Positions 6,273 through 44,352 are shown, numbered from the stretch's first letter. The stretch: 64,000 nt of DNA from Diadema antillarum (GCF_040938485.1 NW_027272677.1:186001-250000); one strand, 5' to 3'. Made by a program: numbers and translations. Notes: generated from the letters alone by a model not told the origin.

Positions 6273-7731
6273 TTAGGAACGTACACTTCCCAAGTCATCT
6301 GGGGTAGCGCGAAGCTCAAAATTACCGTTTATTGCGTTATTGCTGCCTAGCTGGAAGTTGCGGTCTGACCCGCTTCGCTTTATTACCGCGTAGGGCTGCT
6401 CCAGCGTTCCACTGCTAGGATAGTCCTGCATCTTTACTGTTTGTTCCACCGTGGAAGATTGGACGCGGGATTCCGGCAAGATCGACACGTTTAATTTACT
6501 GCTGCTCGTTTCTCCGATGTCTAGTACGTGGGATAAACTTGATTCCTCTCTGCCAGGAGGTGCCGACAGCTGAATGGATGCTAGGGAAGTTTGACGGGTT
6601 ATGATTCGTTTCGAGTCGACACGATTTTTGGCCCCGCTAGCACCTGCAAACAAAACTCCAACATTAATTGTCTGATCAAAGGATAAGTCTTTCACTTCCT
6701 GATCGACACGTACTGGCGTTAGCTGGATAGATGCTTGGGAAATTTGATTCTTCAACTGATGTCGTTTGGAGTTAACACGCTTTGTATCTCCAGTAGCCCC
6801 TCCCGAGTCTCCACTGTCACGGGACGCCAAAACCTTGATAGACGTCTGCGACACCTGTCTGTTGAACACTCGATTCTTGGTCGCATTCAATGAATCTTCA
6901 CTGGTCTGGTCTTTTTCATTCGATGTGGCCCAATTCAAATTATCCAGGCGCGATGTCATTATCTCGTTTTCCGTAGTGATCACTTGGTCTCTGGCGTTGG
7001 AAAGGAGTTTCAAATGCACGTCTTGGCTGGTTCTACTTGTCCCTTGTGACGTGTTTGTGCGGTTTTCGTCTCCTTGCGATCGGTTCAACTGACTGCCGTT
7101 ATAGCCATTCAGCACCGAGTCCATGGAGTCGTCGTGACTGGTGCTGTGCATCATTACCTTGATAGACTGCTGAGATGTCCGGCGGTCGATTGTTCGAGCA
7201 GAGTCCCCGCTTGCACCTGCCAAAATGAGACCACCAGCAGCAACACCAACACCAACACCACCGTCACCACCGTCACCACCACCACGACCAACATCACCAC
7301 CACGGCCAGCACCACCAGTGAGCTGTTCGTAATTGCTGCTGGGGCCAATATCAACATCGATAGCACGCGAGCCTGTGTGGATCGAGACTTCATTCTGATT
7401 CTTCATTCTAACTGCTGGGTCCAGGGAACCAGATGAAGCATGCACTTCGACGCCATCGACGTCATCCGTGTTGATTTCGTCCGATAATCTGGTCTTCACA
7501 TCGCTCAGCGATCTGCCAGACGGACTGCGGCGGCTATTCAGGGCGGAGTCATCCGATTCGTCGCTGTGACCCGCATCGGGCTGGTCGTCCCCTTCGAAGG
7601 CGGGATTTGTATTGCCCTGGCTGGCTGAATCATCGACCGCCTTGCTGATGACGGCTTCGAATGCATCTCCGCTGTCATCCTCGCTGTCGCCAAAGTGGTG
7701 AAGGTCTGGTTTCACGATGTCTAATTCACCT
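6273..7731 (-). CDS. Terminal exon: ~485-aa Ser/Asp/Gly-rich cytoplasmic tail
   Basis: Corresponds to the 500-aa ORF 6273..7775. Acceptor ttcttcag|A GGT GAA is phase 2, matching the TM exon donor. Low-complexity, no recognisable folded domain. Confidence 0.8.
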
Positions 7732-10700
7732 CTGAAGAAACAAAGACGAATGAAGACATCAGCATTAATGGACATAATATAATTTTGTTAGAAGATGATC
7801 ATTGCTGATATGTGTAGATTTTGATGGTATTGTCACAAAGACTTACGAATCATCAAAATAAACAATAAAAAGTGTGTTGGGAATAGTGTCAAAGCCCAAA
7901 TCTGTTTCGTTCTAACACCCACTCTTGGTATCACAACATTGTGAAGATGTTCGCAAACAGCAAGAGAAGCTACACGCAGGTCATATCCATACACACAGAC
8001 ACATCGCTCACTCACGTACATACATGGCCCGTATTTCCATGCACACTTGCAGAACTCGAGGAAACATTGAGTGTCCTGCTTTACGAGTCTGGAGTGGTGG
8101 AAGTAATGTTAACAACTACGGGCATGCATTGATCCACTGCACTATCAATCAAAAGAACAATCTTTTTTTCTGTGATATTAAATAGGTGGGGAGTGTTTCA
8201 AAGCATTATTGCTACCCCCAACGTCTGGAATAGTCTGCCCTGTAAAGTCAGCTATATGAGCCCCATGAGATACTTTTAATCCATTTTGAATGGTGTGCTT
8301 TGTACAGCTAGTATAAGCACTTCGTTGTAACTCTGTTGTATTTTACAATGTAGGCCTATATATTGTCTACGTACTCGTATCATAATTTGATATTGATTCA
8401 ATGTCAATGTTAGGTTGCGCCCAGCCCCCCATTTCATTTTAGTCTTACTCGTCGAAGTCATCCCGGCAGCAGCAGCGACGGAAGAGGACAGGAAGACACA
8501 GGAGAAGCAGCAGCAACAAGATGGCCGCCCACACGATGCCTACGATGGTGGCGACGAGTTGGGGCTCTGTCAAATCAAAGGACCAACATCAGAGATAAAA
8601 GAGGGAGAACAGCATCACAAATTAACCACGATTGCCTCAACGATGAAATTATACTCCATTGATAAGCTTCTTTGACGCTTTGTACAACCAAAACTTCCCA
8701 AGTCATTTACATGCAGAATTTTAGATGTCAAGCTCCTACCGTGGCTGTAAATTTGATTTGAATATAAGTTACAGTTTTCAGTTCGAATGAATTGGAATAA
8801 ATGTTTGTATTATTGTTGATGTTTTCGTAATTTAATGTTTTGAAAATTGATGTAAATTGTGACGATAAGTATTGTACTGTATTTTATAGTAGATTACCGA
8901 AGTATGATAACGTGTTGATTCTAAGACCTTTGGTTTGTTTTAGAGCACTGTGAAGTACTCCCCTGTATAGATACTTTCATATCACTTCTTAAATGCAAAT
9001 TCTGTCGTATAAATTATGTGTACACTCTGCGAAAGTGTCAACCAACCGGTGAATACTGAATTTCCGCAGTGGATAATCAATGCAATTACAGTAATTAATT
9101 AATTCATTCATCTCTAGTAGGGCCTTTATGCATAAATGGTGCTGGTCAAATAACGAGTTGACTGCTCAGAAAGTTTTTTGAATGGACCGCAATTCGAGGG
9201 AGTAAGAAATACTAGTACTTCATGGTATGTGAATTTAGCATTACGCTTGTTTAGGAGCAATGCGCGACTACGTGGAATTAGTACAAGGGAAATCACAACG
9301 TACTCTAAACGAACAACTCTAAAACCTTTCGGCATACGAAATATTACCATTTACGAAATCCGTCTTTTCACAGCGATCTCCAAAGTATGCATATTCGGAA
9401 CATCTGCATGGAGAGAAAGTCGATGGAAGAAATATCATCCGTGTGTGAGAATATTCTTTGTTTTATGACAGATTGGGATTACTGGATTTACAACAGAACC
9501 AAAGTCCATTTACCCCCTAAGCAAGAGTAAAGATAATGAATTGCACGATTTTCACTAAGCAACGGAAGACACGTGCCTTTCTTGCAGAGATATTTTCGCA
9601 CAGGTTGCTACTTCTCAAGCGTCATTAGAGTGGCGTTAATAGAGATTTCCTCAGTATACATGTACCGTATGATTTCATTGAAAGTTTGGCATGGTTTGTT
9701 TCACATTCATTCTTAATATAAAAGTTTTCTGTTCAGTTCAACATTTGTGTTATTTGTCCACTTGTGCAAATAAAACAAAACGAAATACATGTATTACAAC
9801 GGCAATTTAAGAATGAGAAAGAATCAGTGATAACTGAACTCACTCACAACATTATGTAGACATATACAGGTACATGGAAGAACTATTAACATATACGTGT
9901 ACACTTTTACATATTTCGAGGTACGGTTGTACAAAGTATAGGAGACCGTCATCAATAAGCAGTGTACCTGACTGGAATGACGGCCTCGAAAGTGCATCAG
10001 AACATTCAAAATTGAATGAGAACTGAAGAAGCAACGGCAGAAAAAATCTCTTCAGCCTCCTGTTATACATGTACATGTACCAATCGACCTTGATATGGAA
10101 TGACATTTCAACTGGACCTTATATAGACAAAGTAAAATGGTGAACTCACAGACACGAGATAAGGTTGGACGAAGCCGGCTTGAAGCAGGAGGCGCCATTC
10201 AAGCAATAGGTCGGGTTGTCGGCGCACGTGGAGATACAATTTAGATCTCGCACCGTGCAATTCATGGCTTCCGGACACGGCAAGGTGAAACACAGGTCGA
10301 CTGGTATATCATCGCCTAAATAGTGGTAAAGGTGAGGATGATGGCAGAGGTGGTCACAGTAACATGATAATTTATAGCCTACATTAGTTTGCACAGAAAT
10401 GCATATATACGTATATAATAATGTGTATGTTCCAATACGAGAATGCTCAGCTTTACATTACTGTAATTTTTCATGTTACTTAACCACTATAAACCCCTTG
10501 ATGTAATGGCTCTTCGTAGTACGTAGAGTAGTACAGTGGACTCCCGTTATAACGAAGTCCTCGGGACTGGCAGTTTTCTTTCGTTATATCAGAATTTCGT
10601 TATAACCGAACAAATACACAATAAAAAACGTATAGAGCTGATAATTTTGCGACCTGGATTTTTTTCCGTTGTAACCTGAATTTCGTTATAACCGTGTTCG

Positions 10701-13700
10701 TTATGACAGGAATACACTGTAGTATACTTAACCAATCCCGCTAGTTGGATTTACAGTGCTACTGTGTGCAGCCACTTTGTGTATAATATTATGTACGCCA
10801 GTGTGTCAAACATGTATTGTTTCTGTACAGACCTGATAAAGGTCTAAAAAGACTGAAAGCTTGACAACAAGCTATACGTTCGACCATGCACACATAAATG
10901 TATATTCATGATCTGTCATGCTTTGACACTGAAACAAGCAGTGAATAGAATACAGGAATGGTCAAAGAGGCGCTGATAATCATGATGACGCATTAAATGA
11001 TCACAGCAATCATGTCAAATTAATGATAACTATAGCATATAGGGCATCGCCATTATCACCACAGGAGTATTGGCTGGTATCTCACCTTCCTCGTTGACAA
11101 TGAAAACGTCTTCGACCTCAGTACCACCGAGACCCTCGCTCTCGAGCGAGATGAGGAGAGACCTGATCTCGCTTCGCCGCTCCTCAGGCTCAACGGGCTG
11201 GGAGAAGCCAATGCTTGTCAGGACAGACACACCACCGCCGTCAGCAACACTANNNNNNNNNNNNNNNNNNNNNNNNNNNNNNNNNNNNNNNNNNNNNNNN
11301 NNNNNNNNNNNNNNNNNNNNNNNNNNNNNNNNNNNNNNNNNNNNNNNNNNNNNNNNNNNNNNNNNNNNNNNNNNNNNNNNNNNNNNNAGAGAATACAATA
11401 TACAAAACAATACAATACAATCAGATCATTTATGTATCATAGCGCTCTTACACAATCAATGACTGGTTTCACAGCACTTTACAACAAAATTCATTCACAG
11501 ATTGGCATCAAAAAGAAAAGTCTTAAGAATCTTCTAGAAGACATCAAGGGATTGGGAAATGCGGACGAACCGAGGTAGATCGTTCCACAATCGCGATTGT
11601 CCCCCGATCTACTGTTGGTTTTGAGTACATGGGAGCACACAGTTATTTCTTTTCTTTTACATAATTGCACTATATACAAGATTGCAATCTTTGCATTTTC
11701 AATACACTCATATCTAATTTTTGCAAGGGAATCGAAAGCTAAATACACTACCCATAGAAACTGTGTTATGAATGGTGCATACGTTCCCAAGCGCCATTGT
11801 GGAACATAAATACTTCAAATAAATACCCACCTTTTTCATAATTATTTACAGAGGTCACATCACAAATACTATACATGTACTATGCGACACAAAGAATTGT
11901 CAAATTTACAAACGGAACACAGTACCATTACGTCGTCAGTTTACAAAACATTATTATAACGTTAAGTCATCAGCAGTACATCATACTTGCTAACTTGTAC
12001 TGCATCCTATTACGTGTGTATCACTGTATGTTGTATGTTCGATTCTGGACTGAGAGTAGCACGGAGTACTATAATCATAATCATTCCTATCCCATAAGCT
12101 ACAATATTTCACGCTACACAACCATACTATATAATCAACTTTGTTGAATCGTTGATGGTGTTTCCTTTTCCTTCGTTGTTGTCCTCGATATAAATAGTAA
12201 TACAGGTACAAACATAATACGTTAAACAAATTCATCATTGTAGTGTCCTGCTCTGTTGTATAGCAAAGTTGATTCAAGACGTACCTTATGTTTGTGATTG
12301 TGCTGTGAAGGTAAGTACTGTCCCCTTGGAAAGCGATGTCAGCCTACATCAGATGATGGTAAGGACAATAGACCATTATTATAGCACAGCATTGAGGAAA
12401 ATCGAGAACGTCTTTTTCTTGATTTGGGGTGAATTGTTGTGACGCAGGATATATACGCGTGTACACCAAATTTGTTAATGGCGTCCATAATTATGACCAC
12501 ACATACACAGCTGCAGCCTGTATTTTTTATGTGAATTCTTTTGCTTCGTTCTCTGGGAATTACTAAAGGCAAGAAACCACTACACTTACAGTTACCCTAT
12601 ATTTAATGATCCCTTCTATACCAAGACGAAATGAAGGCACTGACATCATCTTACCATATAGGCCTACCAGTATCAAATGTCTTTAATACATTATGATCCA
12701 CGATAAGACTTTTTCCCCTCCGGCATCCCATGTTGTTGCATTAAAAAAACTATTGTACATAATGACATTTCCAAACTCCCAACAAATTGTATAGTCATGT
12801 TGTGTGTAATACAGCAATGGCGGAGTCAGGAGGGCCCCCCATTATTTATTTTTTTAAACCTTTTTTTTTTTGTAAAGAAACCATCCTTGTCAGTCAATTG
12901 AATTGCCCTTAAGCCTTTGCCCCCCCCCCCTCTTTACGGAAATCCTGGATCTGCCCCTGTACAGTGACGACGTTCTCTCACCTTTTCGTTCGTCGGCAAA
13001 GACCAAAAATATAATATTACCCTCTTGATGATCATAATTATTATACAGGCTCAGCCGCTTTGCTAGGACAATATTTTCCGACTCCTCTATGGCGTTAAGG
13101 CAAAATGCTACACAGCCATGATCGTCAAGCCACCATTAATTATGAGGATATACCTGGGTTTGCCAGATGTGACTGAATCCTTGGAATTGCACCGAGTAAG
13201 GGTCGAGAAGGCTGCTGGAGAAGGCGAAGTTTGGCAGGAGGAATTCGATTTCGAACCTGTTGGACTCTGAGGTTGACGAGAAAGAATATTCAGGAAAATG
13301 TATATGCTATATTCAACACAAATAACTAAATGCATAGGTATCACTGCAAACTTTGCAAGCATAACATACGTTTTCACAGAGCAGAGGATATCGTTTGGAA
13401 GACTAGTCACTTTTTTTAAATCCAGCTAATGATGGGAAAGTAAAGATAGATGTATGAATGTAACTTCATAATTTCATCAGCGACCAATTTGTGATTATCG
13501 TATACTGTATGATAAAGGGCGGATCCAGGAATTCCGTAAAGAGGGGCGCCTTTACAAAATTAGAGGGGGTGCATGCAACCATTTTTTCTTTCTATTTCTT
13601 TTGTTTTAACAAAAAGTAAAAGGGGGAAAACGCGCGCCCGGTGAGCTCGCCCTGGATCCGCGACTGATGATGAATACAGACTATCTAAGTAAGTTGAATG

Positions 13701-16013
13701 TGATGAACATAATCTATAGGCCTACATCTCAACATCACGGAAAGGAAATTAGATAATTACCTGAAATATCAATGACTGACACAGTGAAAATGCACGACAC
13801 TGTATTTCCTGCTTCATCCATCGCAGTGTACTGCACTTCCGTGTCGCCTAGTGGGAACAAGGATCCAGGTTGATGGTTGGTGTCGAAGGTGACGAAACCC
13901 GTGTTGTCGGTCGCTTGCGGAGCTCTCCACGACACCGCTGCTGTATCTAAGTCGCTCGCATGAACGTATCCCGAGATTTGGTCGGGGCAGTACGTGAACA
14001 CCGGTGGCTCCACATCTAAGTTAGATACACAGAATAATGATAGCATAGACTAAAGGGAAATTTCCCATATGCAATATTTGGAATCAGTGAAAGCAGAACT
14101 GTATAGTACAGATCAGCGAAGTTTGAGTAAGATAAGAGAATCCGTTCAAAGTTATTAATCTTTGTTGATTTGGTCAAATCCTGCCATCTGTGAATATGAA
14201 GATTACAATCCCTCTGTTGTCACAGCAAAGCTAAAAAGAAGTGATAACGAGAATCCAACGTATTTTTTTTCTTTCAGCACAACGAAACTGCACGTACTGG
14301 ATTTACATTTTCAGAAGCTAAGGGGAGTAATATTACCCTCATTATTATATCAGTAACAGTACAGTTAAGTTCAGTTTAGTTAAGTTCAGTTTAGTTCATT
14401 TTTAAAATATTTCTCCATCGCAATATAATCAATAACATATATATGCACTGTGTACGTGAACAGGTGGTGAAAGTAAAGAATTTCAACATATTAAGCAATC
14501 ACTACAAAAAGGTACATTATACTTTAAAAGGGGATCATACAAACTAGCATTATAGTGACAAATTAATCAGGATGGAGATGGGGGACCCACTGAAAAGCGA
14601 AGCTTGTAGATTGTGCCCCCCCCCCCCCTAGCAATATACCATGTAACAAGTCCAAGGAAGATGTACTTTTCCTTTAAAAAAATGAAATAAATTGCATTTT
14701 TTTTACCGACGATCGTGACAGAAAACGAGCATGTGGCGTAGTTGAAGGACTCGTCGTGGGCTGTGTACATGACCTCCGTGGTGCCGAGCTCAAAGCGGTA
14801 GCCCGTCGGTAAGGACGAAACGAGATTGACCATTCCACTTCTGTCGTCGATTGCCCGTGGAGCGAACCAGGTGATGGCCGCTGAGGTCAGCCCGGGGTCA
14901 GCTTCTTGGACGATATCAAGGGGGCAGTCCATGATCACCGGCGGGATGTTGTCTGAATAAAGAATGATCTTACAGTATTGACTATACAGGCAGACATCGA
15001 AATGAAAATTTATAGAATCATGTGAGATTATTGATAGAAAGATCGGTCTGTATCTTGTCGAGATATGTTCCGCGGAGACTACGTCTGGCTTCATGGAATC
15101 CCGGAGGAGAACCGTTAAAGTTTAAAAAAAATCCTCCGGCCAGACGGATTTCTTTGTCTAATGAGAAAATGGTTTCATGCTTTCAATATTTTGACATGCG
15201 AAACTATCCAACCGAATATGTAAGTTATAAAATGCTACATACTTCTGCTATAATATCAAATGAACCAGGAAATCTTCAAAGCCGTAATATCTTTTAATTA
15301 GGCCTAATCGGTATAAAAATGATTTGATCGCGGAGATGTTTGCGTGGCACACTCAACAGGCAATCATCACGTAGACCTACCTCCTATCCTCTCAAAGTAC
15401 ACGGCTCCGCTAACTGCTTGGAAATCCCCCGCCGATCTCGCCACCGTCTCGCTCAGTCGACACTCGCCCGTGGGAGTGATGTCGACCGAACGGCAGATGA
15501 ACAGCGCCTCGGCGATGCACGAGTCCAGACAGCCTTCCACAGTTGTGAAGGCGATGATTCGGGCGTCGTTGCCGATGAGGCTCTGGCCTTCGATGCGAGT
15601 AAAGAGGCTTAGGACAAAACCTGTGTGAGATAGAGAGAGGGGCGTGGGTATAGGGGAGAGGGAGCTTAGTGCTGGAAAAGGAGAAACTATCAGGGGTAGA
15701 CTACAAGAATCAAATCTATAATGGGCTTTCGGACTCAACTCTTCAGTGACTGAATCTAATGCTGGTGCCTGCATCAGAAATCCCTTAATGTTATCACATC
15801 AAGTTATATAATTACGAGTTAATAAAATTACACATTTGATTCACCACTCATCAGTCGCTCAAGTAATTTTCATGACCAAACAATGATTATGTGAAATCAA
15901 TTCCTTTATCCATCGGATATCAACTTAATCAACAAAGAAGCCAGAAAAATGTAAACTTTAAAACAACAAAGCAAACTATCTACCACACTCAAGGGGGAGT
16001 AGAAATATAAAGG

Positions 16014-16049
<36 letters not shown>

Positions 16050-19000
16050 TTGTTTCTGTAATATTGGTGCCATATTCAGTGGAAACATGTTCACTATTCT
16101 TTGCTGAGATTAGATTATATAAAAAAATGATACTTTCACAGTTTTTGCGGGGCTAACCCAGGGGCTGCAGAGAAGGGGACGGGGGCTGAACCTTTAAGTG
16201 CCCCATGACCCTTTATCCCCCCCCCCTCCCACATAAGATAAAGTTCCGCGCCCCCTGTAACCAGACTGTTAGCTCTATAGGTCCTCACCTTGCACCCCTA
16301 TAATGAAGTCACACGTCGCATTATTTCCAGCCGTGTCGTTCGCGGTGTATGTTACAGTGGTATCACCCGATAAAAATTCGTCCCCGGAATCGTGGCTGCC
16401 CACTACGCTGCTAATCTCCACATTGTCAGTGGCGAACGGACTGCTCCAAACCACCGTGGCGTTCCCGTCGGGACTGCTTGCTATGACGCTGATGTCGGTG
16501 GGGCAGATGATGACTGGCTCCTCGACATCTGATGGGAAAAAAAAGTATTTCATCGAACTAGAATATCACTCCAAAATCAGATCGTCTTTTAACTTCAAAT
16601 GTAAGTTTACCAGTTGCTTGAGATTTACTATAGGCCTAACGGGTTTCAACTTGATTTAAGATGCAAAGTAGATACAGCTGTATAGCCATTTTAGTGATAA
16701 TCATTTTACCTGCTTACCTCACCTTCCTTATCTTAAAAAAAGAAACAATCCTTAATTTCACCATACAAAAGGAACAAAACATGATTTATGGGTAGACATA
16801 GCATAACATTCACTTCACACTTACAATATTGATATGGTTTGTTGTTATAGACAACAGTGTAGAGATAGTCACCTCGTAATTTTATTGTCATTAAAGAGGA
16901 TGGCTAGTAACCGATCAGTGGGAATCAGTGGGAATGCTGAGGGATGATTGTTCCAATCCTTGAGGGATTTATTTAAGAGTACATTATATATCTACTGTTG
17001 TGTGAAAATTATTTGCTTCAGAACGGTCTCATATTCAAGTAATGTGCAGATTAATGCCCCGTCACTGACCAGGGACGCTTACCTGGAAATATTAAACTGC
17101 ACATTACTTGAATATGAGACCATTCTGAAGCAAATACTTTTCACACAAGAATAGATATATAGTGTACTCTTGAATGAATCCCACAAGGATTGGAACAATC
17201 ATCCTCCAGTATTCCCACTGATTCCCACTGATCAGTTACTAGCCATCCCCTTTAAGAGCGTCTGCCTTCCAGTCGTTAGATATAATCTTGTATTTTGTAG
17301 AGACAAATTCAATGACAAATATAAAAGATAAAAACGGAGGTAGCAAAATCTATAGTCCAGTCTGTCAATACTTGAAAATAAGTCTGATTTCATTAATTTG
17401 ATATCGACAATTCATAACAATGATTTTATTCCTGTATAGAGATCTGCTGAAAAGTCGTGCAGCGCATAGAGAAACGAAAAATGTACATTTACAAATCGTT
17501 CCAGTCTATATTAGATCAAAAGCGCAATAATAGACAAACGATTCAAATACTATAGAAATTAATGTCAGGGTAGGCCTACATTATAATAATAATAATAATT
17601 GCATTTATATGGCGCTTCATACTGACGTTTCTAAGCGCACTTTGCTACTCATACAAATAGACTAGAAAACACAATAACATTAACAAAATTAACGTTAACA
17701 GTAACAAAAGAAGAAGAAAGAAAAGAAAAGAAAAGAAAAATACATGTGATACAATGGTACAATAATTGATAACTGTGTGCGCCTCCAGAAAAAAAAAAAT
17801 TACAGCTGATTAAACAGGTGAGTTTTAAGAAGAATTTTAAATGATTCGACAGATGAGGCATTCTGAATATAAAGAGGGAGTTTATTCCAAAGAGTGGGAG
17901 CAATGGAAGAGAAGGCTCGGTCACCATAACGGGTTTTTGTACGTGGGCCATGAAGTAATTGGAGAGAGGAAGATGAACGGAGGGGTCTGGCAGAAGAGGA
18001 GGAGCGGAGAGAGACTAGGTTTTGAAGATATATGGGTGCAAGATTACGTGTGATTTTGTACGTCAGAAGTAGGATCTTGAAAGTAATACGGGAATGGACT
18101 GGAAGCCAATGGAGTGAGCGGAGAACAGGAGATATATGGTCATGTCTCCTACTAAGGGAGACTAATCTAGCGGCTGAATTTTGGATACGTTGGAGAGGGG
18201 ATATGTGAGAAAGAGGGAGGCCGGCAAGGAGGGAGTTGCAGTAGTCCAGATAGGAGGAGACGAAGGCATGGACGAGCCGCTCAGCTGATGATTGATCAAG
18301 CAGACGCCTGATCTTCCCTATTTTGAAAATACCCCATGATGCAGACTTACAAATGTTTGTGATATGGTGTTTAAGAGTTAAGTGTTTGTCCAAAGTAAAG
18401 CCAAGGTCTCTAACACAGTCAGAGACCTTAATAATCCCATCCCGAGTAGTTAGATCTGGTAGAGGAACTGTGCTCCTAAACTGTGATGAGAAATGGATGA
18501 GTTCAGACTTGTCTTCATTCAGACGGAGTCTGTTGGCAGTGGACCAGGCTTTGATGTCGTTGAGACATTCTCTCAGTGAATTAACAGCAGCAATCCTATC
18601 GCCAGGTGACATAGTTATGTAAATTTGAGTGTCGTCAGCATACATAGCGTAGTTGACTCCATGATGACAATTGATGATTCTGGTGAGTGGACCTGTATAG
18701 AGGAGAAAAAGAAGGGGGCCGGCAACGGATCCTTGCGGAACTCCGCAGCTGATAGGACTAGGACATGACCAGGTCCCATTGATTATCACCCTCTGTGTGC
18801 GATCTTGAAGATATGACTTGATCCATTGGATGGCAGTGCCTGTGATGGAATAGTCATTACTAAGTCGTTGTAGTAGCAACGTGTGGTCGAGCGTGTCAAA
18901 CGCAGCCGAATAGTCAAGAAGAAGAAGAGCAGCCTCATTGCCCTTGTCGACAGCAAGAAGGAGATCGTTGAGCACTTTCAACAAGGCAGTTTCTGTTGAG

Positions 19001-27318: not shown

Positions 27319-27361
<43 letters not shown>

Positions 27362-31150: not shown

Positions 31151-31201
<51 letters not shown>

Positions 31202-34200: not shown

Positions 34201-37200
34201 TTTGTATCAATCTTACATGCATTTCTGAAAGGAGACTCATAACATTAGGCCTACATAAGTAGGTCCTAGTGCATTAGCGAGAATGCACTGTCTTAAGACC
34301 GTTAGCATAATTCTGATTTGCCCAAAGTCGGTGACAAATGGGAAAGAAGTGACTTTCATGAGGGCTGATCATACATTCGGAGTGTAAAAGACTTCGTAGT
34401 TTTGTTATTTCGCTTCTGAAAAATCCTATTTAAAAGTTGTGAAACATCGTACTAATCGATATACTTGCTTTAACTGGGTGGATAGCGATGCCGCATTGAT
34501 CTGCATGATGTTGATTATGTTTGCAGTGCATTCTACTGTAATGTCTCTGCTGCCTTTCGAAAAACTACTCTAACGGTCATCCTCCTACCACTCCTAGAAG
34601 CATGGACGACCCGCTTACCTCGTACTGTAACCGTGAACTCGCATGTAGCCGACTTCCCTGCGGAGTTCGTGGCCGTGTACCGCACGATGGTGTTGCCGAG
34701 TCCAAACGTGCTGCCCGGAGACCTGGTAGAATCCACCGTCACCGTACCCGAGTTGTCTGACGCCGTTGGCTCCGTCCAGGTGACCGCTGTTTCCGTTTCA
34801 CCAACGAAGATTAACTCAACTCGGTCTTGCGGACAGAAGTTAAACTCTGGATTCTCAGTATCTAATGACGGGAAAATTGTTTGGGAAGTTTGAATAATGC
34901 AAGCTATACTCCGACAAAAATAACAAGTAATTTCTGTCATAATTAGAAATGTGAAAATAACTGCAACAAATAGAGAAATGTTAAACTGGTTTAGACAAAT
35001 AATTAGAAAAAAACTATGAACGTTTTTAAATTTTACTCTCATACAATGTTCCATAAATTCTATGACCCTTTTTATGGTCCAGACCAAGTGACCACGACGC
35101 ACTTGTGTTGTACGTCTTACCCGCCACTTCTTATTCCTTTTATTTTATCTATTCTTAAAATTGTATATCCCCGACTGCCACTTATTATATTATATATATT
35201 CTTCAACAAAACATTACTTCCCGAATGAGCTCATTGCAAATTGAGTAAGACAGGTCTTTCAAACACTCTTTTTTTAAAATGTGATTTCGTTTAATGTTTT
35301 CAGTATTCTTGATGCAGCGCCAGAAACTTCAGTGTCACGTAGCCAAGCAAACTTGGGGATGTTGTTCCTGAGACATATCGTAATGGGTAAGATTTGTAAG
35401 ACATCTGACTATCAGACGGAGGTCCCGAGGTCGTATCCCATCAAGCGCCTATAATGTTCTTGGACAAGATGTTTTTACCTCTGCCATGTTCCTATATACT
35501 CGAACCATGTTCCCATATATACTCGACTCGAGGGCGATGTGTTAGCTCAGTCGGTAGCGCGTCTGCCTCACTATCCAAAGGACCCCGGTTGGATACCTGG
35601 GTCCCACTGAGTAATGTTGTGTGTAATCATACCGTCCCCTCTAGTAAGAGGCAAAACACTCTGTCCGTCGGATAGGACATAAAATGGAGGTCCCCTATGT
35701 GAGAGAGTTACAACTCACGCAAGTAAAAGATTCCGCTTTATTTATTTATTGCAAAGAGCAGGGTGTTTAACCCGGTGAAGTGGTCCTGCCTTACATCCAA
35801 CTGGATCCCATGGAAGACCAGCTGTCGCAGCTGAATATGGGCTACCCATCCATCTTCTCAGAAGGAAATGAACAAAACAAACAAACAAACGAAAACCCAG
35901 CCCCAGTTCAAGTGCATAAATGGGAAGTGGCAACGCTAGGGCAATAATAGTAGTGGGTCCTCATGAAGAGGAGTGGCAACACAGGAGAGGCTATACCTTC
36001 ATAGATAAAGACAACTAAAGTGATGATGATCATCATCATCATTATCAATATCTTTGTTCCCTTTTGTCAACAAGTTACCAACTATTGGCATTGTATAATT
36101 TTTCTCGCATCTGTCACATGTTCTTCAGAATCTTGCTTTGTAATGAATTTCTCATTGACGTCCCCTCTCTTCCCACCTACAGGCCTATCTCACTAGAGGA
36201 GACTGTCGCAACCGATAAGTCGCAGCGACTCGTGCGACTCGAAAGACTAAAAATTGACTCGCGCTCTGACCAAGAAGGCGACTCCAGGGAGACGTCCGAG
36301 ACGTCTCCAATCAAGATGACAAGTTATTCGCCTGGCAATCGCATGGATCGACGTTGCGGTAACATCTCCGGCCGTCGCGGAGACTTCTCCGAGACGTCTT
36401 CACATCATCAGCGTTAGGTCGTCATTGGTCTCCGCATGGTTGCGGAGAAGTCGCAAGACAAAACTAGTCTCCGCGACGAGGCCGCAAATAATGGAGATGT
36501 CGGAGAGACATCTCCGAGAACAGCTGGAGACTATGGAGAAAGTTCCCGGAAAAACGATATGGAACTTGCACCATCCTCCCTTAATCCCCTAGAGATCTGT
36601 CTGTCGCCAGGAGACGTCGTGGAGACGTTTTTGCAACCAGTGGAGACTCGAGTGACCAACAGGTCACCACCTTTCGTCTCTATAGACCAATGAGATACCC
36701 AATGTCGCAGTGGATGTAGAAAAGTTGCTTCCATCTTGGAACGATCATTTCATGTTGTGATTCTAGTGAACGACCATATAACGAGTTTGTGTAGGCACCT
36801 TTCTGTGGCAGGGTATTTAACATTAAACGGAATTTATCTTGTGATAGAGCTAACAGAGTCTCTCATTCTACCACGTCACTTTATTGAAGGATACGACGAT
36901 ATTATGAAAACAAGCAAGCAAGCAAACAAACAAACAAACAAAAGCAAACCAAAAACACGCATTTACTCAGCGCGAATAAAGTATGCCTAAAGTGTGCACC
37001 GACGGAAATCACTCTTGGAATGAGGAAGCTTTTGTTGCTGGTTGTTAAAAATGCAATTGAATATGACATCAGGCAAAACAAACAAAACATTTTATGTTTC
37101 ATGAAAAAGGAATAAAGAGTTTAAAGGGTGTAGATTTGAGTTCTTTCGTGATAAATTGTTTAGTTACAATGTATATTAATATGCTTTCGAGAAGTATAAT

Positions 37201-43200: not shown

Positions 43201-44352
43201 CATTCTCAAATCATCACAAAAGCCTCAATGATAAATGAACAGACATTGTAAGATGATGACATGGTAGTTTTAGTGGCTATGCAGGAGTGAGAGGAATTAA
43301 AAAAAAAAAGTGAACGACTCAGATTTCCCGATTCTTCAAGGTAACAGGTAATAGAGACAATTGTTGCTTTGGGACTTGTCGTGTGATTCGGAAGAAAGTT
43401 ATGTTCACAGTGATTTAATCGTAAACGTCCTTTGATTTCTGCACTGACAGATAAAACAAGTGTTGAAAATATGCTCGAAAAGCAAACAAACAAATAAACA
43501 AACAAACAAACATACAAACAGAAAACTGACAAGAAATTCTTCACATGGAGCAAGTCAAAAATGACAAGGTCAGCAAAAATCATAGAAAAACAACAGCACC
43601 AGTAATATCTGGACTGCTGTGATAATCAGACTTCAAGTGACAAATAAAGTTACTTCGGCACGTGGTTTTCGTTTCTCACCAAGCGTTTCGTTGATACGTC
43701 GTAAGACGTAAGACGTAATTTTCCAAAGGTTGTTTCTTGCGTGAAGAAAACTTCATCCTCCTTTGTATTCACTATTTTTGATACACATTCTAAGTCAGCT
43801 CGAGTCAACTTTGCTCACTCAAAATTGATAGCATTCAAATTAATTTCGTCGAAACAGGTGTAGGCCTAGATGTTGATACCCCCCCCCCCGTTAGACATAT
43901 AATATATCAAATTTTCTATACCAATTCTGCGTGACTCACAAGATACACACAACAGACACGATCTATGTTCACATAAACTCACATATAGACGCAAGTTTTT
44001 CAAAGTACAGTAGCTCCACACATTCACCAGCTCAAATTGATATTTGGGAACATGATTCGATTAAACTATCTCGATGCAGCAGTCACGCCTAACCGTTTTT
44101 ACACCCAGACCGACCCGCACCTCATCGAGCGAAGAACGGGGTGAGAACTCCCGTGGAGTATGGTGCAGAATTTCACCAGGCATTATAGTGGTCCTATATA
44201 CTAACTCGACAGAACTGAAGAGCATGGTGTTGAAACGAATCCTCCTTACCTCCTCCCGCGATCTGATGCAGATGACAAGTTAGCAGGATCAACATAAAGA
44301 TGATGTGAAGGAGAAACGTGCTCCCCCATCTTGCTCCTAGCCGTGATTCCAT
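6273..44352 (-). CDS. Whole gene model (19 coding exons): type I membrane protein SP-(HYR)9-PAN-(HYR)2-SEA-EGF-TM-long cytoplasmic tail, ~1,700-1,740 aa
   Basis: Exons were read manually on the minus strand and join in frame: 44250-44352, 34619-34861, 32199-32435, 26615-26860, 25702-25935, 24896-25144, 23231-23464, 21839-22087, 21355-21588, 16289-16528, 15381-15620, 14707-14952, 13761-14015, 13154-13266, 11086->11252 (start in N gap), 10150-10315, 9348-9403, 8449-8566, 6273-7731. Visible coding sum is 5,089 nt. All visible junctions are GT-AG with matching phases. Confidence 0.85.
8449..8566 (-). CDS. Transmembrane exon
   Basis: EPQLVATIVGIVWAAILLLLLLLCLPVLFRRCCCRDDFDE: a hydrophobic span of over 20 residues followed by a basic stop-transfer. 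tgacag|AG ... GA|gtaag; 118 nt, phase 1-2. Confidence 0.88.
9348..9403 (-). CDS. Micro-exon completing the EGF domain (absent from ORF track)
   Basis: (L)CSEYAYFGDRCEKTDFVN supplies the C5 and Y/F-x-G-x-R-C6 motif. atgcag|A ... G|gtaat; 56 nt, phase 2-1, exactly bridging the neighbouring exons. Confidence 0.85.
10150..10315 (-). CDS. EGF-like exon (partial EGF plus first part of a full EGF)
   Basis: DLCFTLPCPEAMNCTVRDLNCISTCADNPTYCLNGASCFKPASSNLISCL. atttag|GC ... CT|gtgag; 166 nt, phase 1-2. Confidence 0.85.
10534..10719. mobile_element. Tc1/pogo-like MITE
   Basis: TA|CAGTGGACTCCCGTTATAACG ... CGTTATGACAGGAATACACTG|TA, with repeated CGTTATAAC motifs. Confidence 0.75.
11086..11252 (-). CDS. 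SEA domain C-terminal exon (5' part hidden in assembly gap)
   Basis: SVADGGGVSVLTSIGFSQPVEPEERRSEIRSLLISLESEGLGGTEVEDVFIVNEE; phase-1 donor G|gtgag. A T-rich tract lies just beyond the gap at 11388-11420. Confidence 0.65.
11253..11387. other. Assembly gap (135 N)
   Basis: Run of N in the sequence; it interrupts the SEA coding exon. Confidence 1.
12815..12959. mobile_element. Short GGCGGATCCAG-type MITE
   Basis: Imperfect TIR caatggcggagtcagg / cctggatctgcccctg; related copies at 13516-13666 and a fragment at ~27500-27555. Confidence 0.5.
13154..13266 (-). CDS. SEA domain N-terminal exon (not the frame shown in the ORF track)
   Basis: Phase-1 reading gives ESNRFEIEFLLPNFAFSSSLLDPYSVQFQGFSHIWQTQ, matching the SEA start F-x-F-x-L...F...L-x-D-P-x-S-x2-F. 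cctcag|AG ... CAG|gtata; 113 nt, phase 1-0. Confidence 0.75.
13516..13666. mobile_element. Short GGCGGATCCAG-type MITE
   Basis: TIR gggcggatccagg / cctggatccgcga; shares tttcttttgttttaacaaaaa with the ~27500 fragment. Confidence 0.55.
13761..14015 (-). CDS. HYR domain exon 11
   Basis: DVEPPVFTYCPD...VSWRAPQATDNTG...PGSLFPLGDTEVQYTAMDEAGNTVSCIFTVSV. acttag|AT ... G|gtaat; 255 nt. Confidence 0.9.
14707..14952 (-). CDS. HYR domain exon 10
   Basis: DNIPPVIMDCPLD...ITWFAPRAIDD...FELGTTEVMYTAHDESFNYATCSFSVTI. attcag|AC ... G|gtaaa; 246 nt. Confidence 0.9.
15030..15160 (+). repeat. Fragment homologous to the MITE at 48440-49053
   Basis: gaaagatcggtctgtatct...tgttccgcggagact.cgtctggcttca.gga.tcccggagga...tcctccgg.cagacggat is shared with 48460-48590. 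Confidence 0.7.
15381..15620 (-). CDS. PAN/apple domain exon (4-Cys type)
   Basis: FTRIEGQSLIG...TVEGCLDSC...FICRSVDI...GECRLS...AVYFER fits the PAN C-x3-C...C...C pattern. acacag|GT ... G|gtagg; 240 nt, phase 1-1. Confidence 0.85.
16013..16050 (+). repeat. (TTG)n microsatellite
   Basis: Visible tract; source of the polyQ ORF 15906..16094. Confidence 0.9.
16289..16528 (-). CDS. HYR domain exon 9 (canonical)
   Basis: DVEEPVIICPTD...VVWSSPFATDN...SGDEFLSGDTTVTYTANDTAGNNATCDFII. catcag|AT ... G|gtgag; 240 nt. Confidence 0.9.
16895..17251. mobile_element. Kolobok-type MITE
   Basis: TTAA|AGAGGATGGCTAGTAAC... and ...GTTACTAGCCATCCCCT|TTAA. Near-perfect TIR of ~75 bp, purine (RR) termini and a TTAA TSD. 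Confidence 0.8.
17581..20860 (-). mobile_element. L2-clade (CR1 group) LINE, 5'-truncated, intronic, same orientation as host gene
   Basis: Intact ORF2, a 3' UTR ending in a GCGCTT...AAGCGC stem-loop, and an (ATT)n tail at ~17581-17600. No ORF1 and no clear TSD seen. Confidence 0.9.
17800..20727 (-). CDS. LINE ORF2: apurinic-like endonuclease + reverse transcriptase (975 aa, uninterrupted)
   Basis: APE motifs WNARS, ITESW, IYRPP, GDFNIH, TLDL, SDH. RT motifs YRPIANL, QSAYR, LDYSAAFD, GVPQGS, YADD. L2-type C-terminus LDYCNSLL...LHWLPV...WNKLP. Confidence 0.95.
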   Translation of the reverse strand: MCVLLQDYFRIPRSQSLCDASSGSQFGLWNARSLTNKVDAVSTLIIDNDIDVLVITESWLSGDQRDEPTLAELKLSLPNFNIINHPRKTSRGGGICVLYRSAARCVVNDTHKFMSFELLDFTIHLTSSSTVRVHCIYRPPHSSRHTFTSNDFLDEFLTLLESAAVDAHPTILLGDFNIHVDDSADSFAQSFLNAVEAFGFHQHVKGATHQAGHTLDLVFSRKSEDIISHITVLPSLPSDHSAILSAINLKGPPNPRRKVSFRKLRNIDTNSFRQDIKQALLTSQCTSCPTEAISMYNDMLSNLLDKHAPVKTVTVTIRPNAPWFSDEIREARRRRRRAERRMLKSGMQTDMDLYRQECELYYSLITDAKSQYLRKEIANADSKRLFNFVKKLSTPSDSSIYPEHSSDSELAHRFSIFFMKKIDDIVSSFVSDVNHLELSVQAPENSLNCNLSEFNPVTDEQLRRLIMLSPPKSCSLDPLPTWLLKECLDELLPVLKNIINTSLSSGIVPIPFKTSLVSPLLKKPNLDPDVLRNYRPIANLPFVSKLLERIVSTQLMSYVDSNHLLPTNQSAYRNLHSTETALLKVLNDLLLAVDKGNEAALLLLDYSAAFDTLDHTLLLQRLSNDYSITGTAIQWIKSYLQDRTQRVIINGTWSCPSPISCGVPQGSVAGPLLFLLYTGPLTRIINCHHGVNYAMYADDTQIYITMSPGDRIAAVNSLRECLNDIKAWSTANRLRLNEDKSELIHFSSQFRSTVPLPDLTTRDGIIKVSDCVRDLGFTLDKHLTLKHHITNICKSASWGIFKIGKIRRLLDQSSAERLVHAFVSSYLDYCNSLLAGLPLSHISPLQRIQNSAARLVSLSRRHDHISPVLRSLHWLPVHSRITFKILLLTYKITRNLAPIYLQNLVSLRSSSSARPLRSSSSLQLLHGPRTKTRYGDRAFSSIAPTLWNKLPLYIQNASSVESFKILLKTHLFNQL
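20884..21039. mobile_element. Small TIR element (GGGTGTTTCAT-type MITE) abutting the LINE 5' end
   Basis: ctgggggtgtttcatcaacgtttgtcagcgctgacaac / gttgtcagcgctggcaaacgatgaaacaccccag; internal sequence similar to 56449-56648. Confidence 0.7.
21355..21588 (-). CDS. HYR domain exon 8 (type B)
   Basis: GAYTGCPD...AYWTPPTV...PGAPLDIGTTIVTY...DICSFNVTV. atgcag|TG ... G|gtaac; 234 nt. Confidence 0.88.
21839..22087 (-). CDS. HYR domain exon 7 (type A, 4 Cys)
   Basis: DIESPTFTFCP...RVLSNSAC...WTIPVAEDNFG...PGTDLLPCGTTPVVYTATDSYNNTDFCEFNVTI. tgccag|AT ... G|gtaag; 249 nt. Confidence 0.9.
22843..23135. mobile_element. MITE-like element built from GGTTCGTTATTCCGAA motifs, inverted between its halves
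   Basis: ttcgttaatccga/ttattccgaa in the left half and ttcggaataacgaac in the right half. Its right end resembles that of 57830-58485. Confidence 0.55.
23231..23464 (-). CDS. HYR domain exon 6 (type B)
   Basis: ISYENCPM...ATWTPPTI...SHSPGQSFTIGMTTVTY...DVCSFVVIV. cgacag|TC ... G|gtaac; 234 nt. Confidence 0.88.
24180..24431 (-). mobile_element. tRNA-derived SINE with CORE-like segment and (CA)n-rich tail
   Basis: Minus strand: A box TGGTCCAGTGG, B box GGTTCGAGTCC, then tgtgctccttggcaaagcact (similar to the CORE-SINE motif). Confidence 0.65.
24896..25144 (-). CDS. HYR domain exon 5 (type A, 4 Cys)
   Basis: DVEDPIFLTCP...RVLSQSSC...WEIPLAQDNSG...PGVTRFECGRTLVTYTAADSAGNKAFCSFNVTI. ttgtag|AT ... 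G|gtacat; 249 nt. Confidence 0.9.
25702..25935 (-). CDS. HYR domain exon 4 (type B, WTPPT)
   Basis: DGAYENCPSD...PGTFSAVVSWTPPTV...SHNPGEMFFIGETNVTY...DVCHFTVTV. gaacag|AC ... G|gtacat; 234 nt. Confidence 0.88.
26615..26860 (-). CDS. HYR domain exon 3 (type A, 4 Cys)
   Basis: DVEPPMYTFCP...RVLFSDEC...WQTPTATDNAG...PGSRFDC...VTYTAVDASKNMATCSFDVTI. ccacag|AT ... G|gtagg; 246 nt. Confidence 0.9.
27322..27360 (+). repeat. (CT)n microsatellite
   Basis: Visible tract. Confidence 0.9.
27680..27825 (+). repeat. Degenerate (AATC)n tract
   Basis: Repeated atcaatcaatca with interruptions. Confidence 0.75.
29282..29457. mobile_element. Near-perfect foldback MITE (~60-bp arms)
   Basis: tgtttcataaagctgttcgtaaagttacgaacaacttacgagcgactggtgatcagttct versus its reverse complement at ~29390-29449, with about one mismatch. 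Confidence 0.8.
31154..31200 (+). repeat. (CA)n microsatellite
   Basis: Visible tract. Confidence 0.92.
32199..32435 (-). CDS. HYR domain exon 2 (divergent, lacks the DN motif)
   Basis: PSIYGCPD...PGQGSALVNWIEP...PGLRLPVGQITVTY...TCRFLIVV. catcag|CG ... G|gtaag; 237 nt, phase 1-1. Confidence 0.88.
34619..34861 (-). CDS. HYR domain exon 1 (canonical)
   Basis: DTENPEFNFCPQD...VTWTEPTASDNSG...PGSTFGLGNTIVRYTATNSAGKSATCEFTVTV. cattag|AT ... G|gtaag; 243 nt, phase 1-1. Confidence 0.9.
35532..36045 (+). mobile_element. tRNA-derived SINE with Deu-domain-like core
   Basis: A box TAGCTCAGTCGG and B box-like GGTTGGATACC. Core gtccgtcggataggacataaaatggaggtccc...gtaaaagattcc...aagagcagggtgt...cccggtg...gtcctg. 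(GAT/CAT)n tail. Confidence 0.7.
36180..36690. mobile_element. GC-rich MITE-like element dense in GGAGAC/GTCTCC/GTCGC motifs
   Basis: High density of short repeated motifs in both orientations; termini are degenerate. Confidence 0.45.
37930..38320. mobile_element. Degenerate foldback element with CACGAG/CTCGTG motifs
   Basis: Left half has cacgagtcata-type repeats and right half has tatgactcgtg-type repeats in inverted orientation. Confidence 0.4.
44250..44352 (-). CDS. Exon 1: start codon and signal peptide (MESRLGARWGSTFLLHIIFMLILLTCHLHQIAGG)
   Basis: ATG in good context (gtaATGG). Basic n-region, hydrophobic core FLLHIIFMLILL and small residues at the end. Phase-1 donor G|gtaagg matches the phase-1 acceptor of the first HYR exon. 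Linkage across the 9.4-kb intron is inferred. Confidence 0.75.

What the first reader, a model, noticed from the sequence alone, without database searches (positions are those of the whole stretch)
6273..44352. Mucin-like SEA-EGF-TM chassis carrying an 11-HYR + PAN stalk: candidate undescribed cell-surface receptor architecture
Seen: 19 phase-compatible exons give SP-(HYR)9-PAN-(HYR)2-SEA-EGF-TM-~490-aa tail. Four of them (signal peptide, SEA start, EGF micro-exon, TM) are absent from the ORF track as such or appear there only in another frame or context. Established: SEA followed by EGF and a TM helix defines the membrane-proximal part of MUC3/12/13/17 and IMPG2; HYR is an Ig-like fold known from echinoderm hyalin and SVEP1/SRPX; PAN mediates protein or glycan binding. 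The segment CISTCADNPTYCLNGASC...CLC...YFGDRCE resembles the IMPG2/mucin juxtamembrane EGF, including a phase-2 intron inside C-x-C. Inference: a folded HYR rod replaces the O-glycosylated PTS stalk, giving a long adhesion or recognition receptor with a signalling tail. I do not recognise a named gene with this domain order.
Basis: partly seen in the sequence, partly recalled or inferred. Interest (0 to 1): 0.75.

Follow-up and report, generated by a model that had tools for sequence, protein, structure and literature searches.

The report
Sea-urchin HYR-PAN-SEA-EGF membrane protein gene
This is a real, intact 20-exon sea-urchin gene for a long cell-surface protein (11 HYR modules and a PAN module on a mucin-type SEA-EGF-membrane anchor); the same gene is already predicted in at least four other sea urchins and mentioned once in the literature, but nobody has tested what it does.

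Summary
On the minus strand, 44352-6273, 20 canonical AG/GT exons in compatible phases give one ORF of 1714 aa: signal peptide, 9 HYR, PAN, 2 HYR, SEA, Cys-rich linker plus EGF, one TM helix and a 486-aa tail.

Pfam passes all 11 HYR exons and the PAN exon. SEA is below Pfam's cut-off, but a predicted structure of the orthologous module matches only solved SEA domains at the top.

The N run (11253-11387) is intronic and ends one base before the acceptor AG. Ortholog residues 1060/1061 are contiguous across it, so no coding letters are lost.

The architecture is not undescribed. XP_072167903.1 (Diadema setosum, "hyalin-like") is 94% identical and colinear. Lytechinus pictus, L. variegatus and Strongylocentrotus purpuratus have 5HYR-PAN-2HYR-SEA-EGF-TM orthologs. 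Kober & Pogson 2017 describe Sp-Ebr1_5 as TM + SEA + seven HYR and positively selected.

New here:
- The SEA lacks the autocleavage serine (GGV instead of GSV).
- A paralog in the same genome has a true mucin stalk on the same cassette.
- Diadema carries four extra HYRs and a tail about twice as long.

No RNA run was listed.

The parts
44250..44352 (-). Exon 1: start codon and signal peptide (34 aa), phase-1 donor GAG|gtaagg
   Evidence: Hydrophobic segment at residues 5-33. The ATG, the frame (a 6-nt in-frame indel) and the donor are conserved in D. setosum DNA about 9.4 kb upstream of HYR1. No SignalP run and no RNA evidence.
34619..34861 (-). Exon 2: HYR1
   Evidence: Pfam HYR 73.8 bits; phase 1-1, AG/GT; dN/dS 0.11 against D. 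setosum
32199..32435 (-). Exon 3: HYR2
   Evidence: Pfam HYR 37.3 bits; dN/dS 0.16
26615..26860 (-). Exon 4: HYR3 (type A, extra Cys pair)
   Evidence: Pfam HYR 67 bits
25702..25935 (-). Exon 5: HYR4 (type B)
   Evidence: Pfam HYR 53.9 bits
24896..25144 (-). Exon 6: HYR5 (type A)
   Evidence: Pfam HYR 55.5 bits
23231..23464 (-). Exon 7: HYR6 (type B)
   Evidence: Pfam HYR 37.5 bits
21839..22087 (-). Exon 8: HYR7 (type A)
   Evidence: Pfam HYR 47.3 bits
21355..21588 (-). Exon 9: HYR8 (type B)
   Evidence: Pfam HYR 41 bits
17803..20751 (-). Not part of the gene product: non-LTR retrotransposon ORF (endonuclease + reverse transcriptase) inside the HYR8-HYR9 intron
   Evidence: Pfam RVT_1 108 bits and Exo_endo_phos 65.6 bits. 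The orthologous intron in D. setosum is only about 440 nt.
16289..16528 (-). Exon 10: HYR9
   Evidence: Pfam HYR 60.5 bits
15381..15620 (-). Exon 11: PAN/apple domain
   Evidence: Pfam PAN_1 24.3 bits against cut-off 21.4; 38-41 bits in the camarodont orthologs; borders from the ortholog
14707..14952 (-). Exon 12: HYR10
   Evidence: Pfam HYR 57.6 bits
13761..14015 (-). Exon 13: HYR11
   Evidence: Pfam HYR 68.4 bits
13154..13266 (-). Exon 14: SEA, first strand and first helix
   Evidence: 97% identical to P0001 residues 1004-1041. SEA fold of the orthologous module.
12285..12343 (-).
   Evidence: 100% identical to P0001 residues 1042-1060; AG/GT, phase 0 in and phase 2 out
11253..11387 (.). N run (gap or masked), intronic; ends one base before the acceptor AG of exon 16
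   Evidence: Its letters were not looked up anywhere.
11086..11249 (-). Exon 16: SEA, strands 2-4 and second helix; GGGVSV stands where G|SVVV would be
   Evidence: P0001 residues 1061-1117; alignment A1; fold
10150..10315 (-). Exon 17: four-Cys linker and first four Cys of the EGF-like domain
   Evidence: 98% identical to P0001; Pfam EGF below cut-off; dN/dS 0.05; paralog matches
9348..9403 (-). Exon 18: EGF micro-exon (last two Cys), entered by a phase-2 intron inside C-x-C
   Evidence: The donor at 9348 was chosen because it gives the invariant VNEP. 9355 is an in-frame alternative.
8449..8566 (-). Exon 19: transmembrane helix and RRCCCR juxtamembrane stretch
   Evidence: Kyte-Doolittle maximum 3.05; 100% identical to D. 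setosum
6273..7731 (-). Exon 20: 486-aa cytoplasmic tail and stop codon
   Evidence: 485-codon open frame. A 474-codon orthologous open frame with the same end exists in D. setosum. dN/dS 0.43. No Pfam domain. NPAF motif and four RxxSQxSI(K/Q)(V/L) repeats.

Best explanation
The span holds one intact protein-coding gene of a diadematid sea urchin. It is the ortholog of the echinoid 'hyalin-like' / Sp-Ebr1_5 family.

The product is a type I single-pass membrane glycoprotein of about 1714 aa. A signal peptide is followed by a rod of Ig-like HYR modules: nine, then a PAN/apple module, then two more. This rod sits on a membrane-proximal SEA domain, a four-Cys linker plus EGF-like domain, one TM helix with a Cys-rich cytosolic border, and a long acidic, Ser-rich, probably disordered tail.

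Shown here:
- the exon structure and the single reading frame;
- the domain identities;
- orthology and purifying selection on every exon;
- absence of the SEA autocleavage serine;
- common origin of the SEA-EGF-TM cassette with a true membrane mucin in the same genome.

Inferred:
- The protein stays in one piece at the cell surface, because the SEA should not self-cleave.
- It binds a partner through the distal HYR/PAN modules. Those are the modules reported as positively selected in strongylocentrotids.
- It couples to adaptors or endocytosis through short motifs in the tail (NPAF, repeated RxxS sites).

On this reading it is an adhesion or recognition receptor, possibly in gamete or microbe recognition.
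For: Gene structure:
- 20 AG/GT exons chain into one ORF of 1714 aa.

Domains:
- 11 HYR and one PAN pass Pfam.
- The SEA region of the orthologous module has pLDDT of about 90 and a beta-alpha-beta-beta-alpha-beta layout.
- The seven best Foldseek matches in the PDB are all SEA domains, from MUC16, TMPRSS11D and TMPRSS6, with TM-score by target 0.6-0.69 for six of the seven (0.13 for the long TMPRSS6 chain).
- The only hydrophobic segments are the signal peptide and the TM helix.

Orthology:
- The D. setosum protein XP_072167903.1 is 94% identical and colinear exon by exon.
- dN/dS is 0.14 for HYR, 0.19 for PAN, 0.22 for SEA, 0.04 for EGF, 0 for TM and 0.43 for the tail, at dS of about 0.15.
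- Single-protein orthologs with 5HYR-PAN-2HYR-SEA-EGF-TM exist in L. pictus, L. variegatus and S. purpuratus.
- The SEA-EGF-TM block is 41-43% identical, with all 10 Cys and VNEP invariant.

Other:
- All four orthologs have GGV where cleaving SEA domains have G|SV.
- The paralog is PTS-SEA(GSVI)-EGF-TM with the same intron positions.
- PMC5521101 gives Sp-Ebr1_5 as TM + SEA + 7 HYR, ranked 5 of 1008 positively selected genes, with the selected sites in HYR domains.
Against: - No transcript evidence could be obtained; no RNA run was listed. All junctions rest on splice consensus, phase, orthology and other species' RefSeq models.
- The first exon is absent from the D. setosum model, which starts with a different exon lacking a signal peptide.
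- Pfam SEA and EGF scores are below the curated cut-offs in every ortholog.
- The structure model was made from four sequences, and its EGF part has low confidence.
- I could not show that XP_781917.4 and SPU_006534 are the same gene.
- Function, ligand, tissue and tail signalling are untested.
- Between the two Diadema genomes the HYR exons are under purifying selection, not positive selection.
Confidence: 0.85

Rival explanations
1. Two adjacent genes are wrongly joined: a secreted HYR-PAN protein ending after HYR11, and a separate short SEA-EGF-TM membrane protein.
For: No RNA evidence was available. If the 494-nt intron after HYR11 were retained, the frame would stop 7 codons later, so a secreted isoform is conceivable.
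Against: - HYR11 ends on a phase-1 GT donor that matches the phase-1 acceptor of the first SEA exon.
- No start codon or signal peptide lies upstream of the SEA exons.
- The only hydrophobic segments are at the N-terminus and the TM helix.
- RefSeq models in four other species join the two halves in one protein.
- The order PAN-2HYR-SEA-EGF-TM is conserved between Diadema and the camarodonts.
Confidence: 0.05
2. The gene is the same, but the protein is a shed or secreted matrix component, like hyalin, rather than a signalling receptor. The tail would then serve only sorting or anchoring.
For: - The sources name it hyalin or hyalin-like.
- HYR arrays are typical of extracellular matrix proteins (established knowledge).
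- The tail has no Pfam domain and is the least constrained part (dN/dS 0.43).
- Tail length differs more than twofold between lineages.
Against: - The TM exon is 100% conserved and the tail frame is kept open over 474-485 codons in two species, ending at the same place.
- The SEA lacks the serine needed for the usual self-cleavage route to shedding.
- A membrane-proximal acidic NPAF stretch is shared with Lytechinus.
Confidence: 0.1

Closest known systems
XP_072167903.1 'hyalin-like' of Diadema setosum (RefSeq prediction)
   Same: Ortholog. It is 94% identical over 1277 aligned residues, with 11 HYR, PAN, SEA and EGF in the same order and colinear exons.
   Different: The database model lacks the conserved signal-peptide exon. 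It also ends 70 residues into a tail frame that stays open for 474 codons in D. setosum DNA. The window's model is therefore more complete.
S. purpuratus XP_781917.4 'hyalin' (very probably Sp-Ebr1_5, SPU_006534, of PMC5521101), with the L. pictus and L. variegatus orthologs
   Same: The membrane-proximal core PAN-2HYR-SEA-linker-EGF-TM is the same. The SEA-EGF-TM block is 41-43% identical, with invariant Cys, GGV and VNEP.
   Different: They have five HYRs before PAN instead of nine. Their tails are about 200-215 aa instead of 486 and lack the four RxxSQxSI repeats. That XP_781917.4 is SPU_006534 was inferred from matching domain content and was not tested.
SEA-module membrane mucins (MUC3/12/13/17 type) and IMPG2; within this genome, the paralog on C468/C1578
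   Same: SEA, then EGF, then a single TM and a cytoplasmic tail. The genome's own mucin paralog shares the exon layout and the phase-2 intron inside C-x-C. The comparison with the human proteins rests on my own knowledge and was not tested here.
   Different: There is no PTS stalk: ectodomain S+T+P is 28%, against 48% in the paralog's PTS exon. There is no G|S cleavage motif. A four-Cys linker stands before the EGF.
Hyalin and EBR1 (egg bindin receptor) of sea urchins
   Same: Tandem HYR modules.
   Different: By established knowledge, hyalin is a very large secreted protein without a TM helix. EBR1 has an ADAMTS-like head and TSP1/CUB repeats. No such domains are found here or in the orthologs.

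Membership tests
Echinoid HYR-PAN-SEA-EGF-TM family ('hyalin-like' / Sp-Ebr1_5) | HYR array interrupted by one PAN domain that is followed by exactly two HYRs | tested here: met
   Window exons. Orthologs: PAN at 763-834 of 1299 aa, 431-502 of 1094 aa and 434-505 of 1111 aa.
Echinoid HYR-PAN-SEA-EGF-TM family ('hyalin-like' / Sp-Ebr1_5) | Alignable SEA, four-Cys linker, EGF and TM block with invariant cysteines | tested here: met
   E 4.5e-57 to L. pictus over this block alone. Alignment A1 shows 41-43% identity to the D. setosum sequence and 73% mean column identity. The window's exons are 86-100% identical to P0001.
Echinoid HYR-PAN-SEA-EGF-TM family ('hyalin-like' / Sp-Ebr1_5) | Orthologous, colinear locus under purifying selection | tested here: met
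   All 19 exons after the first map in order onto the D. setosum locus, with dN/dS 0-0.43. The upstream region, including exon 1, is colinear.
Echinoid HYR-PAN-SEA-EGF-TM family ('hyalin-like' / Sp-Ebr1_5) | Identity of XP_781917.4 with SPU_006534 (Sp-Ebr1_5) | not testable with these tools
   Only the description (TM, SEA, seven HYR) in PMC5521101 matches. No SPU sequence was at hand.
SEA-module transmembrane mucins | Long Pro/Thr/Ser-rich O-glycosylated stalk | tested here: not met
   The ectodomain is filled by HYR, PAN, SEA and EGF. S+T+P is 28% overall, against 48% in the paralog's 859-codon PTS exon.
SEA-module transmembrane mucins | SEA domain next to the membrane | tested here: met
   The fold model has pLDDT of about 90, and the seven top PDB matches are SEA domains. 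Pfam SEA scores only 18.5-23 bits against a cut-off of 26.4, so membership rests on the fold.
SEA-module transmembrane mucins | G|S(V/I)VV autoproteolysis site | tested here: not met
   GGGVSV in Diadema and GGVVIQ / GGVEIQ in the camarodonts. The mucin paralog keeps GSVI.
SEA-module transmembrane mucins | EGF-like domain between SEA and TM | tested here: inconclusive
   The sequence shows the six-Cys spacing and an aromatic-x-G-x-R-C end. HMM scores are below cut-off: EGF 14.8-16.8 bits and EGF_2 15.8 bits. PDB profile matches to EGF, TGF-alpha and Spitz have E 0.03-0.2. The fold model has low confidence there.
Hyalin | Secreted protein without a membrane anchor | tested here: not met
   A strong TM helix is followed by a 486-aa tail.
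EBR1 (ADAMTS-like egg bindin receptor) | Metalloprotease-like head and TSP1/CUB repeats | tested here: not met
   No such Pfam families appear in any exon or in the four orthologs.

The most novel reading that the evidence does not exclude
An echinoid-specific recognition receptor made by putting a HYR/PAN rod on a membrane-mucin SEA-EGF-TM cassette whose SEA has lost self-cleavage. Its distal HYRs would engage a fast-evolving partner, either a sperm or egg ligand or a microbe. In the Diadema lineage it would have been rebuilt with four more HYRs and a doubled tail carrying four new RxxS repeats. If so, it would be a second, membrane-anchored HYR-based gamete or pathogen recognition system beside EBR1.
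Probability: 0.12. Interest if true: 0.65.

Novelty: new member of a known kind. Interest (0 to 1): 0.35.

Why it matters
The gene family is conserved across sea urchins that split more than 200 million years ago (my own knowledge of echinoid phylogeny). It ranks among the strongest positively selected genes in strongylocentrotids (PMC5521101). It still has no functional study and a misleading automatic name.

This window gives a fuller gene model than the public D. setosum one, with a signal peptide and the whole tail.

It also shows how the architecture arose. A mucin-type SEA-EGF-TM cassette is shared with a true mucin in the same genome. The symmetric phase 1-1 HYR exons can be duplicated in pairs.

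The missing cleavage serine is a clear, testable difference from the membrane mucins.

L. pictus has an ortholog and is, to my knowledge, genetically tractable, so a knockout is feasible.

Tried and rejected
- **RNA evidence:** The look-up of sequencing runs with the tail exon listed no run, so read laying could not be used.
- **Word search with the tail:** nothing. Its length window excludes full-length relatives.
- **Big protein search with the tail:** only the D. setosum protein. The tail is not recognisably conserved outside Diadema at that level.
- **Pfam on single SEA and EGF exons:** nothing or sub-threshold. These domains are split over several exons.
- **Joined model:** It was built only in a local script, to check frame, hydropathy and identity. 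The database orthologs served for whole-protein scans instead.
- **Gap as a break in the coding sequence:** rejected.
- **Second copy on C1332:** it was used only for coordinates. Its stretch opposite the N run was not fetched or read. The same stretch in the D. setosum loci was not inspected either.
- **Border variants 9355/8564:** rejected, because they delete the invariant VNE.
- **Longer HYR1 exon of the D. setosum model:** rejected for this genome. A 1-nt indel between the species lies in that extension, and the GTAAGC donor is conserved.
- **Literature:** searches for XP_781917 and SPU_006534 found only PMC5521101.
- **Flanks of the window:** no Pfam-recognisable gene.

Full report
**1. 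What is in the sequence**

Stop-to-stop frames on the minus strand between 6.2 and 44.4 kb hold a row of HYR-like pieces, a PAN-like piece, a Cys-rich piece, a hydrophobic piece and a 504-codon open frame.
- Pfam confirms HYR in eleven separate pieces (37-74 bits, cut-off 21.7) and PAN_1 in one (24.3 bits, cut-off 21.4).
- A local HMM built from these eleven units finds no further unit anywhere in the window on either strand.
- The 983-codon frame at 17803-20751 is a non-LTR retrotransposon (RVT_1, Exo_endo_phos). It lies in an intron.

**2. Gene model**

Candidate splice sites were listed with their phases and then checked against an ortholog. The final model has 20 exons. All have AG acceptors and GT donors, and they chain into one frame of 1714 codons plus a stop.
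- Every HYR exon and the PAN exon is phase 1-1.
- For the EGF-2 and TM borders two in-frame choices exist. I take 9348 and 8566 because they give VNEP, which is invariant in all orthologs.

The joined protein was built only in a local script, for frame, hydropathy and identity checks. It was not sent to any search or fold tool.

**3. The N run**

The N run at 11253-11387 ends one base before the AG acceptor of exon 11249-11086. Residues 1042-1060 of the D. setosum ortholog map to 12343-12287, and residues 1061-1117 map to 11251-11081. No coding residue therefore falls in the run; it is intronic. What it hides is the polypyrimidine tract and branch site of that intron.

The distance between the flanking exons is the same (2951 nt) on a second, 100% identical copy of the gene on contig C1332. 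That copy is probably the other haplotype. I used its coordinates only. I did not fetch or read its stretch opposite the run, nor that stretch in D. setosum.

**4. Relatives**

The tail exon found nothing in the word search. In the exhaustive search it found one protein: XP_072167903.1, 'hyalin-like', Diadema setosum, 1299 aa.
- Pfam on that protein gives 11 HYR, PAN, SEA (18.5 bits) and EGF (16.8 bits).
- My model is 94.4% identical to it over 1277 aligned residues.

Searching with its SEA-EGF-TM part, and then with that of the first hit, found three more proteins:
- XP_063957984.1 (L. pictus);
- XP_041469399.1 (L. variegatus);
- XP_781917.4 (S. purpuratus).

Each has seven HYR, with PAN after the fifth, then SEA (20-23 bits), EGF and a TM helix.

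The literature search found Kober & Pogson 2017 (PMC5521101). [quoted passage not shown] They rank it fifth among 1008 positively selected genes, with the selected codons in three HYR domains. No other paper in the library mentions it. My data show only a close relative of D. setosum, at dS of about 0.15.

**5. Selection and conservation**

Every exon after the first has a colinear counterpart in the D. setosum locus:

| Part | dN/dS |
|---|---|
| HYR (877 codons) | 0.14 |
| PAN | 0.19 |
| SEA | 0.22 |
| EGF | 0.04 |
| TM | 0 |
| Tail | 0.43 |

- The tail frame is open for 474 codons in D. setosum and ends at the same place, although the public model stops after 70 tail residues.
- The public model also starts with a different exon that has no signal peptide.
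- The window's exon 1 has a conserved counterpart about 9.4 kb upstream of HYR1 in D. setosum. The ATG is kept, the frame is kept through a 6-nt in-frame deletion, and the GGTAAGG donor is kept.
- That exon is no better conserved than its flanks (84% against 92-94%), so it remains the weakest part of the model.

**6. Domain tests**

- **SEA.** AlphaFold2 on an alignment of the four orthologous SEA-EGF-TM blocks gives pLDDT of about 90 for residues 8-113, with a beta-alpha-beta-beta-alpha-beta layout. The seven best Foldseek matches in the PDB are all SEA domains (MUC16, mouse TMPRSS11D-like, TMPRSS6). A PDB profile search also touches 2e7v (SEA) and EGF, TGF-alpha and Spitz, at weak E-values.
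- **Cleavage site.** Where cleaving SEA domains have G|SVVV, all four orthologs have GGV. The nucleophilic serine is missing, so self-cleavage is not expected. This is an inference from established SEA chemistry.
- **Topology.** Hydropathy shows only the signal peptide and one TM helix, giving a type I topology. The ectodomain has 14 N-glycosylation sequons.
- **Tail.** It is rich in S, G and D and has no Pfam domain. It shares an acidic stretch with an NPAF motif with Lytechinus (NAAY in S. purpuratus) and a GNF-x-x-R island near the end. It has four RxxSQxSI(K/Q)(V/L) repeats that the camarodont tails lack.

**7. Origin of the architecture**

The EGF-1 exon finds paralogs in the same genome. 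The best one, on C468 with its haplotype copy on C1578, has these parts:
- an 859-codon exon that is 48% S/T/P;
- SEA exons with GSVI;
- the same four-Cys linker and EGF, split by the same phase-2 intron in C-x-C;
- a TM exon and an acidic tail exon.

That paralog is a classical membrane mucin.

Within the rod, HYR3/5/7 and HYR4/6/8 form two alternating types, 45-51% identical within a type and about 30% between types. This fits duplication of two-exon units. It also fits the difference of four HYRs between Diadema and the camarodonts.

**8. Verdict**

Function as an uncleaved adhesion or recognition receptor is my best inference, held at about even odds. Existence of the single gene with this architecture I hold at about 0.85-0.9. 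No RNA run was listed, so transcript proof is still missing.

Noticed in passing
window 17803-20751 (-): A 983-codon open frame of a non-LTR retrotransposon (endonuclease + reverse transcriptase) lies in the HYR8-HYR9 intron, in the same orientation as the gene. The orthologous D. setosum intron is only about 440 nt, so the insertion is lineage-specific and possibly recent.
   Followed up: partly
G000:C1332:577705-584696 (+), against the window: A second, 100% identical copy of the SEA, EGF and tail exons lies on another contig, with a 3-nt intron length difference. The paralog is likewise present twice (C468 and C1578). The 1.75-Gb assembly seems to hold both haplotypes.
   Followed up: partly
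L004 + L006 (G000:C468:724600-733100, +) and L005/L003 (C1578, -): A classical membrane mucin gene. It has an 859-codon exon that is 48% S/T/P, a SEA with GSVI, a four-Cys linker plus EGF with the same phase-2 intron, a TM helix and an acidic tail. It is paralogous to the cassette of the gene studied here.
   Followed up: partly
L008:1400-1500 and L007:29605-31029 (D. setosum): The public D. setosum model XP_072167903.1 seems incomplete. It misses the conserved signal-peptide exon and ends 70 residues into a tail frame that stays open for 474 codons.
   Followed up: yes
window 54891-55425: A minisatellite of about 35 copies of a 15-nt unit, which explains the strong GC skew there. It reads as GGSYP repeats in one frame; no Pfam scan was run on that frame.
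   Followed up: partly
window 61332-63300: About four copies, some 565 nt apart, of a repeat that carries similar 100-codon open frames on the minus strand. One copy was scanned and has no Pfam match.
   Followed up: partly
G000:C1308:132504-132623 and C713:2581774-2581890: Weaker matches (45-46% identity) to the four-Cys linker and EGF exon. They may be a third gene with this cassette.
   Followed up: no
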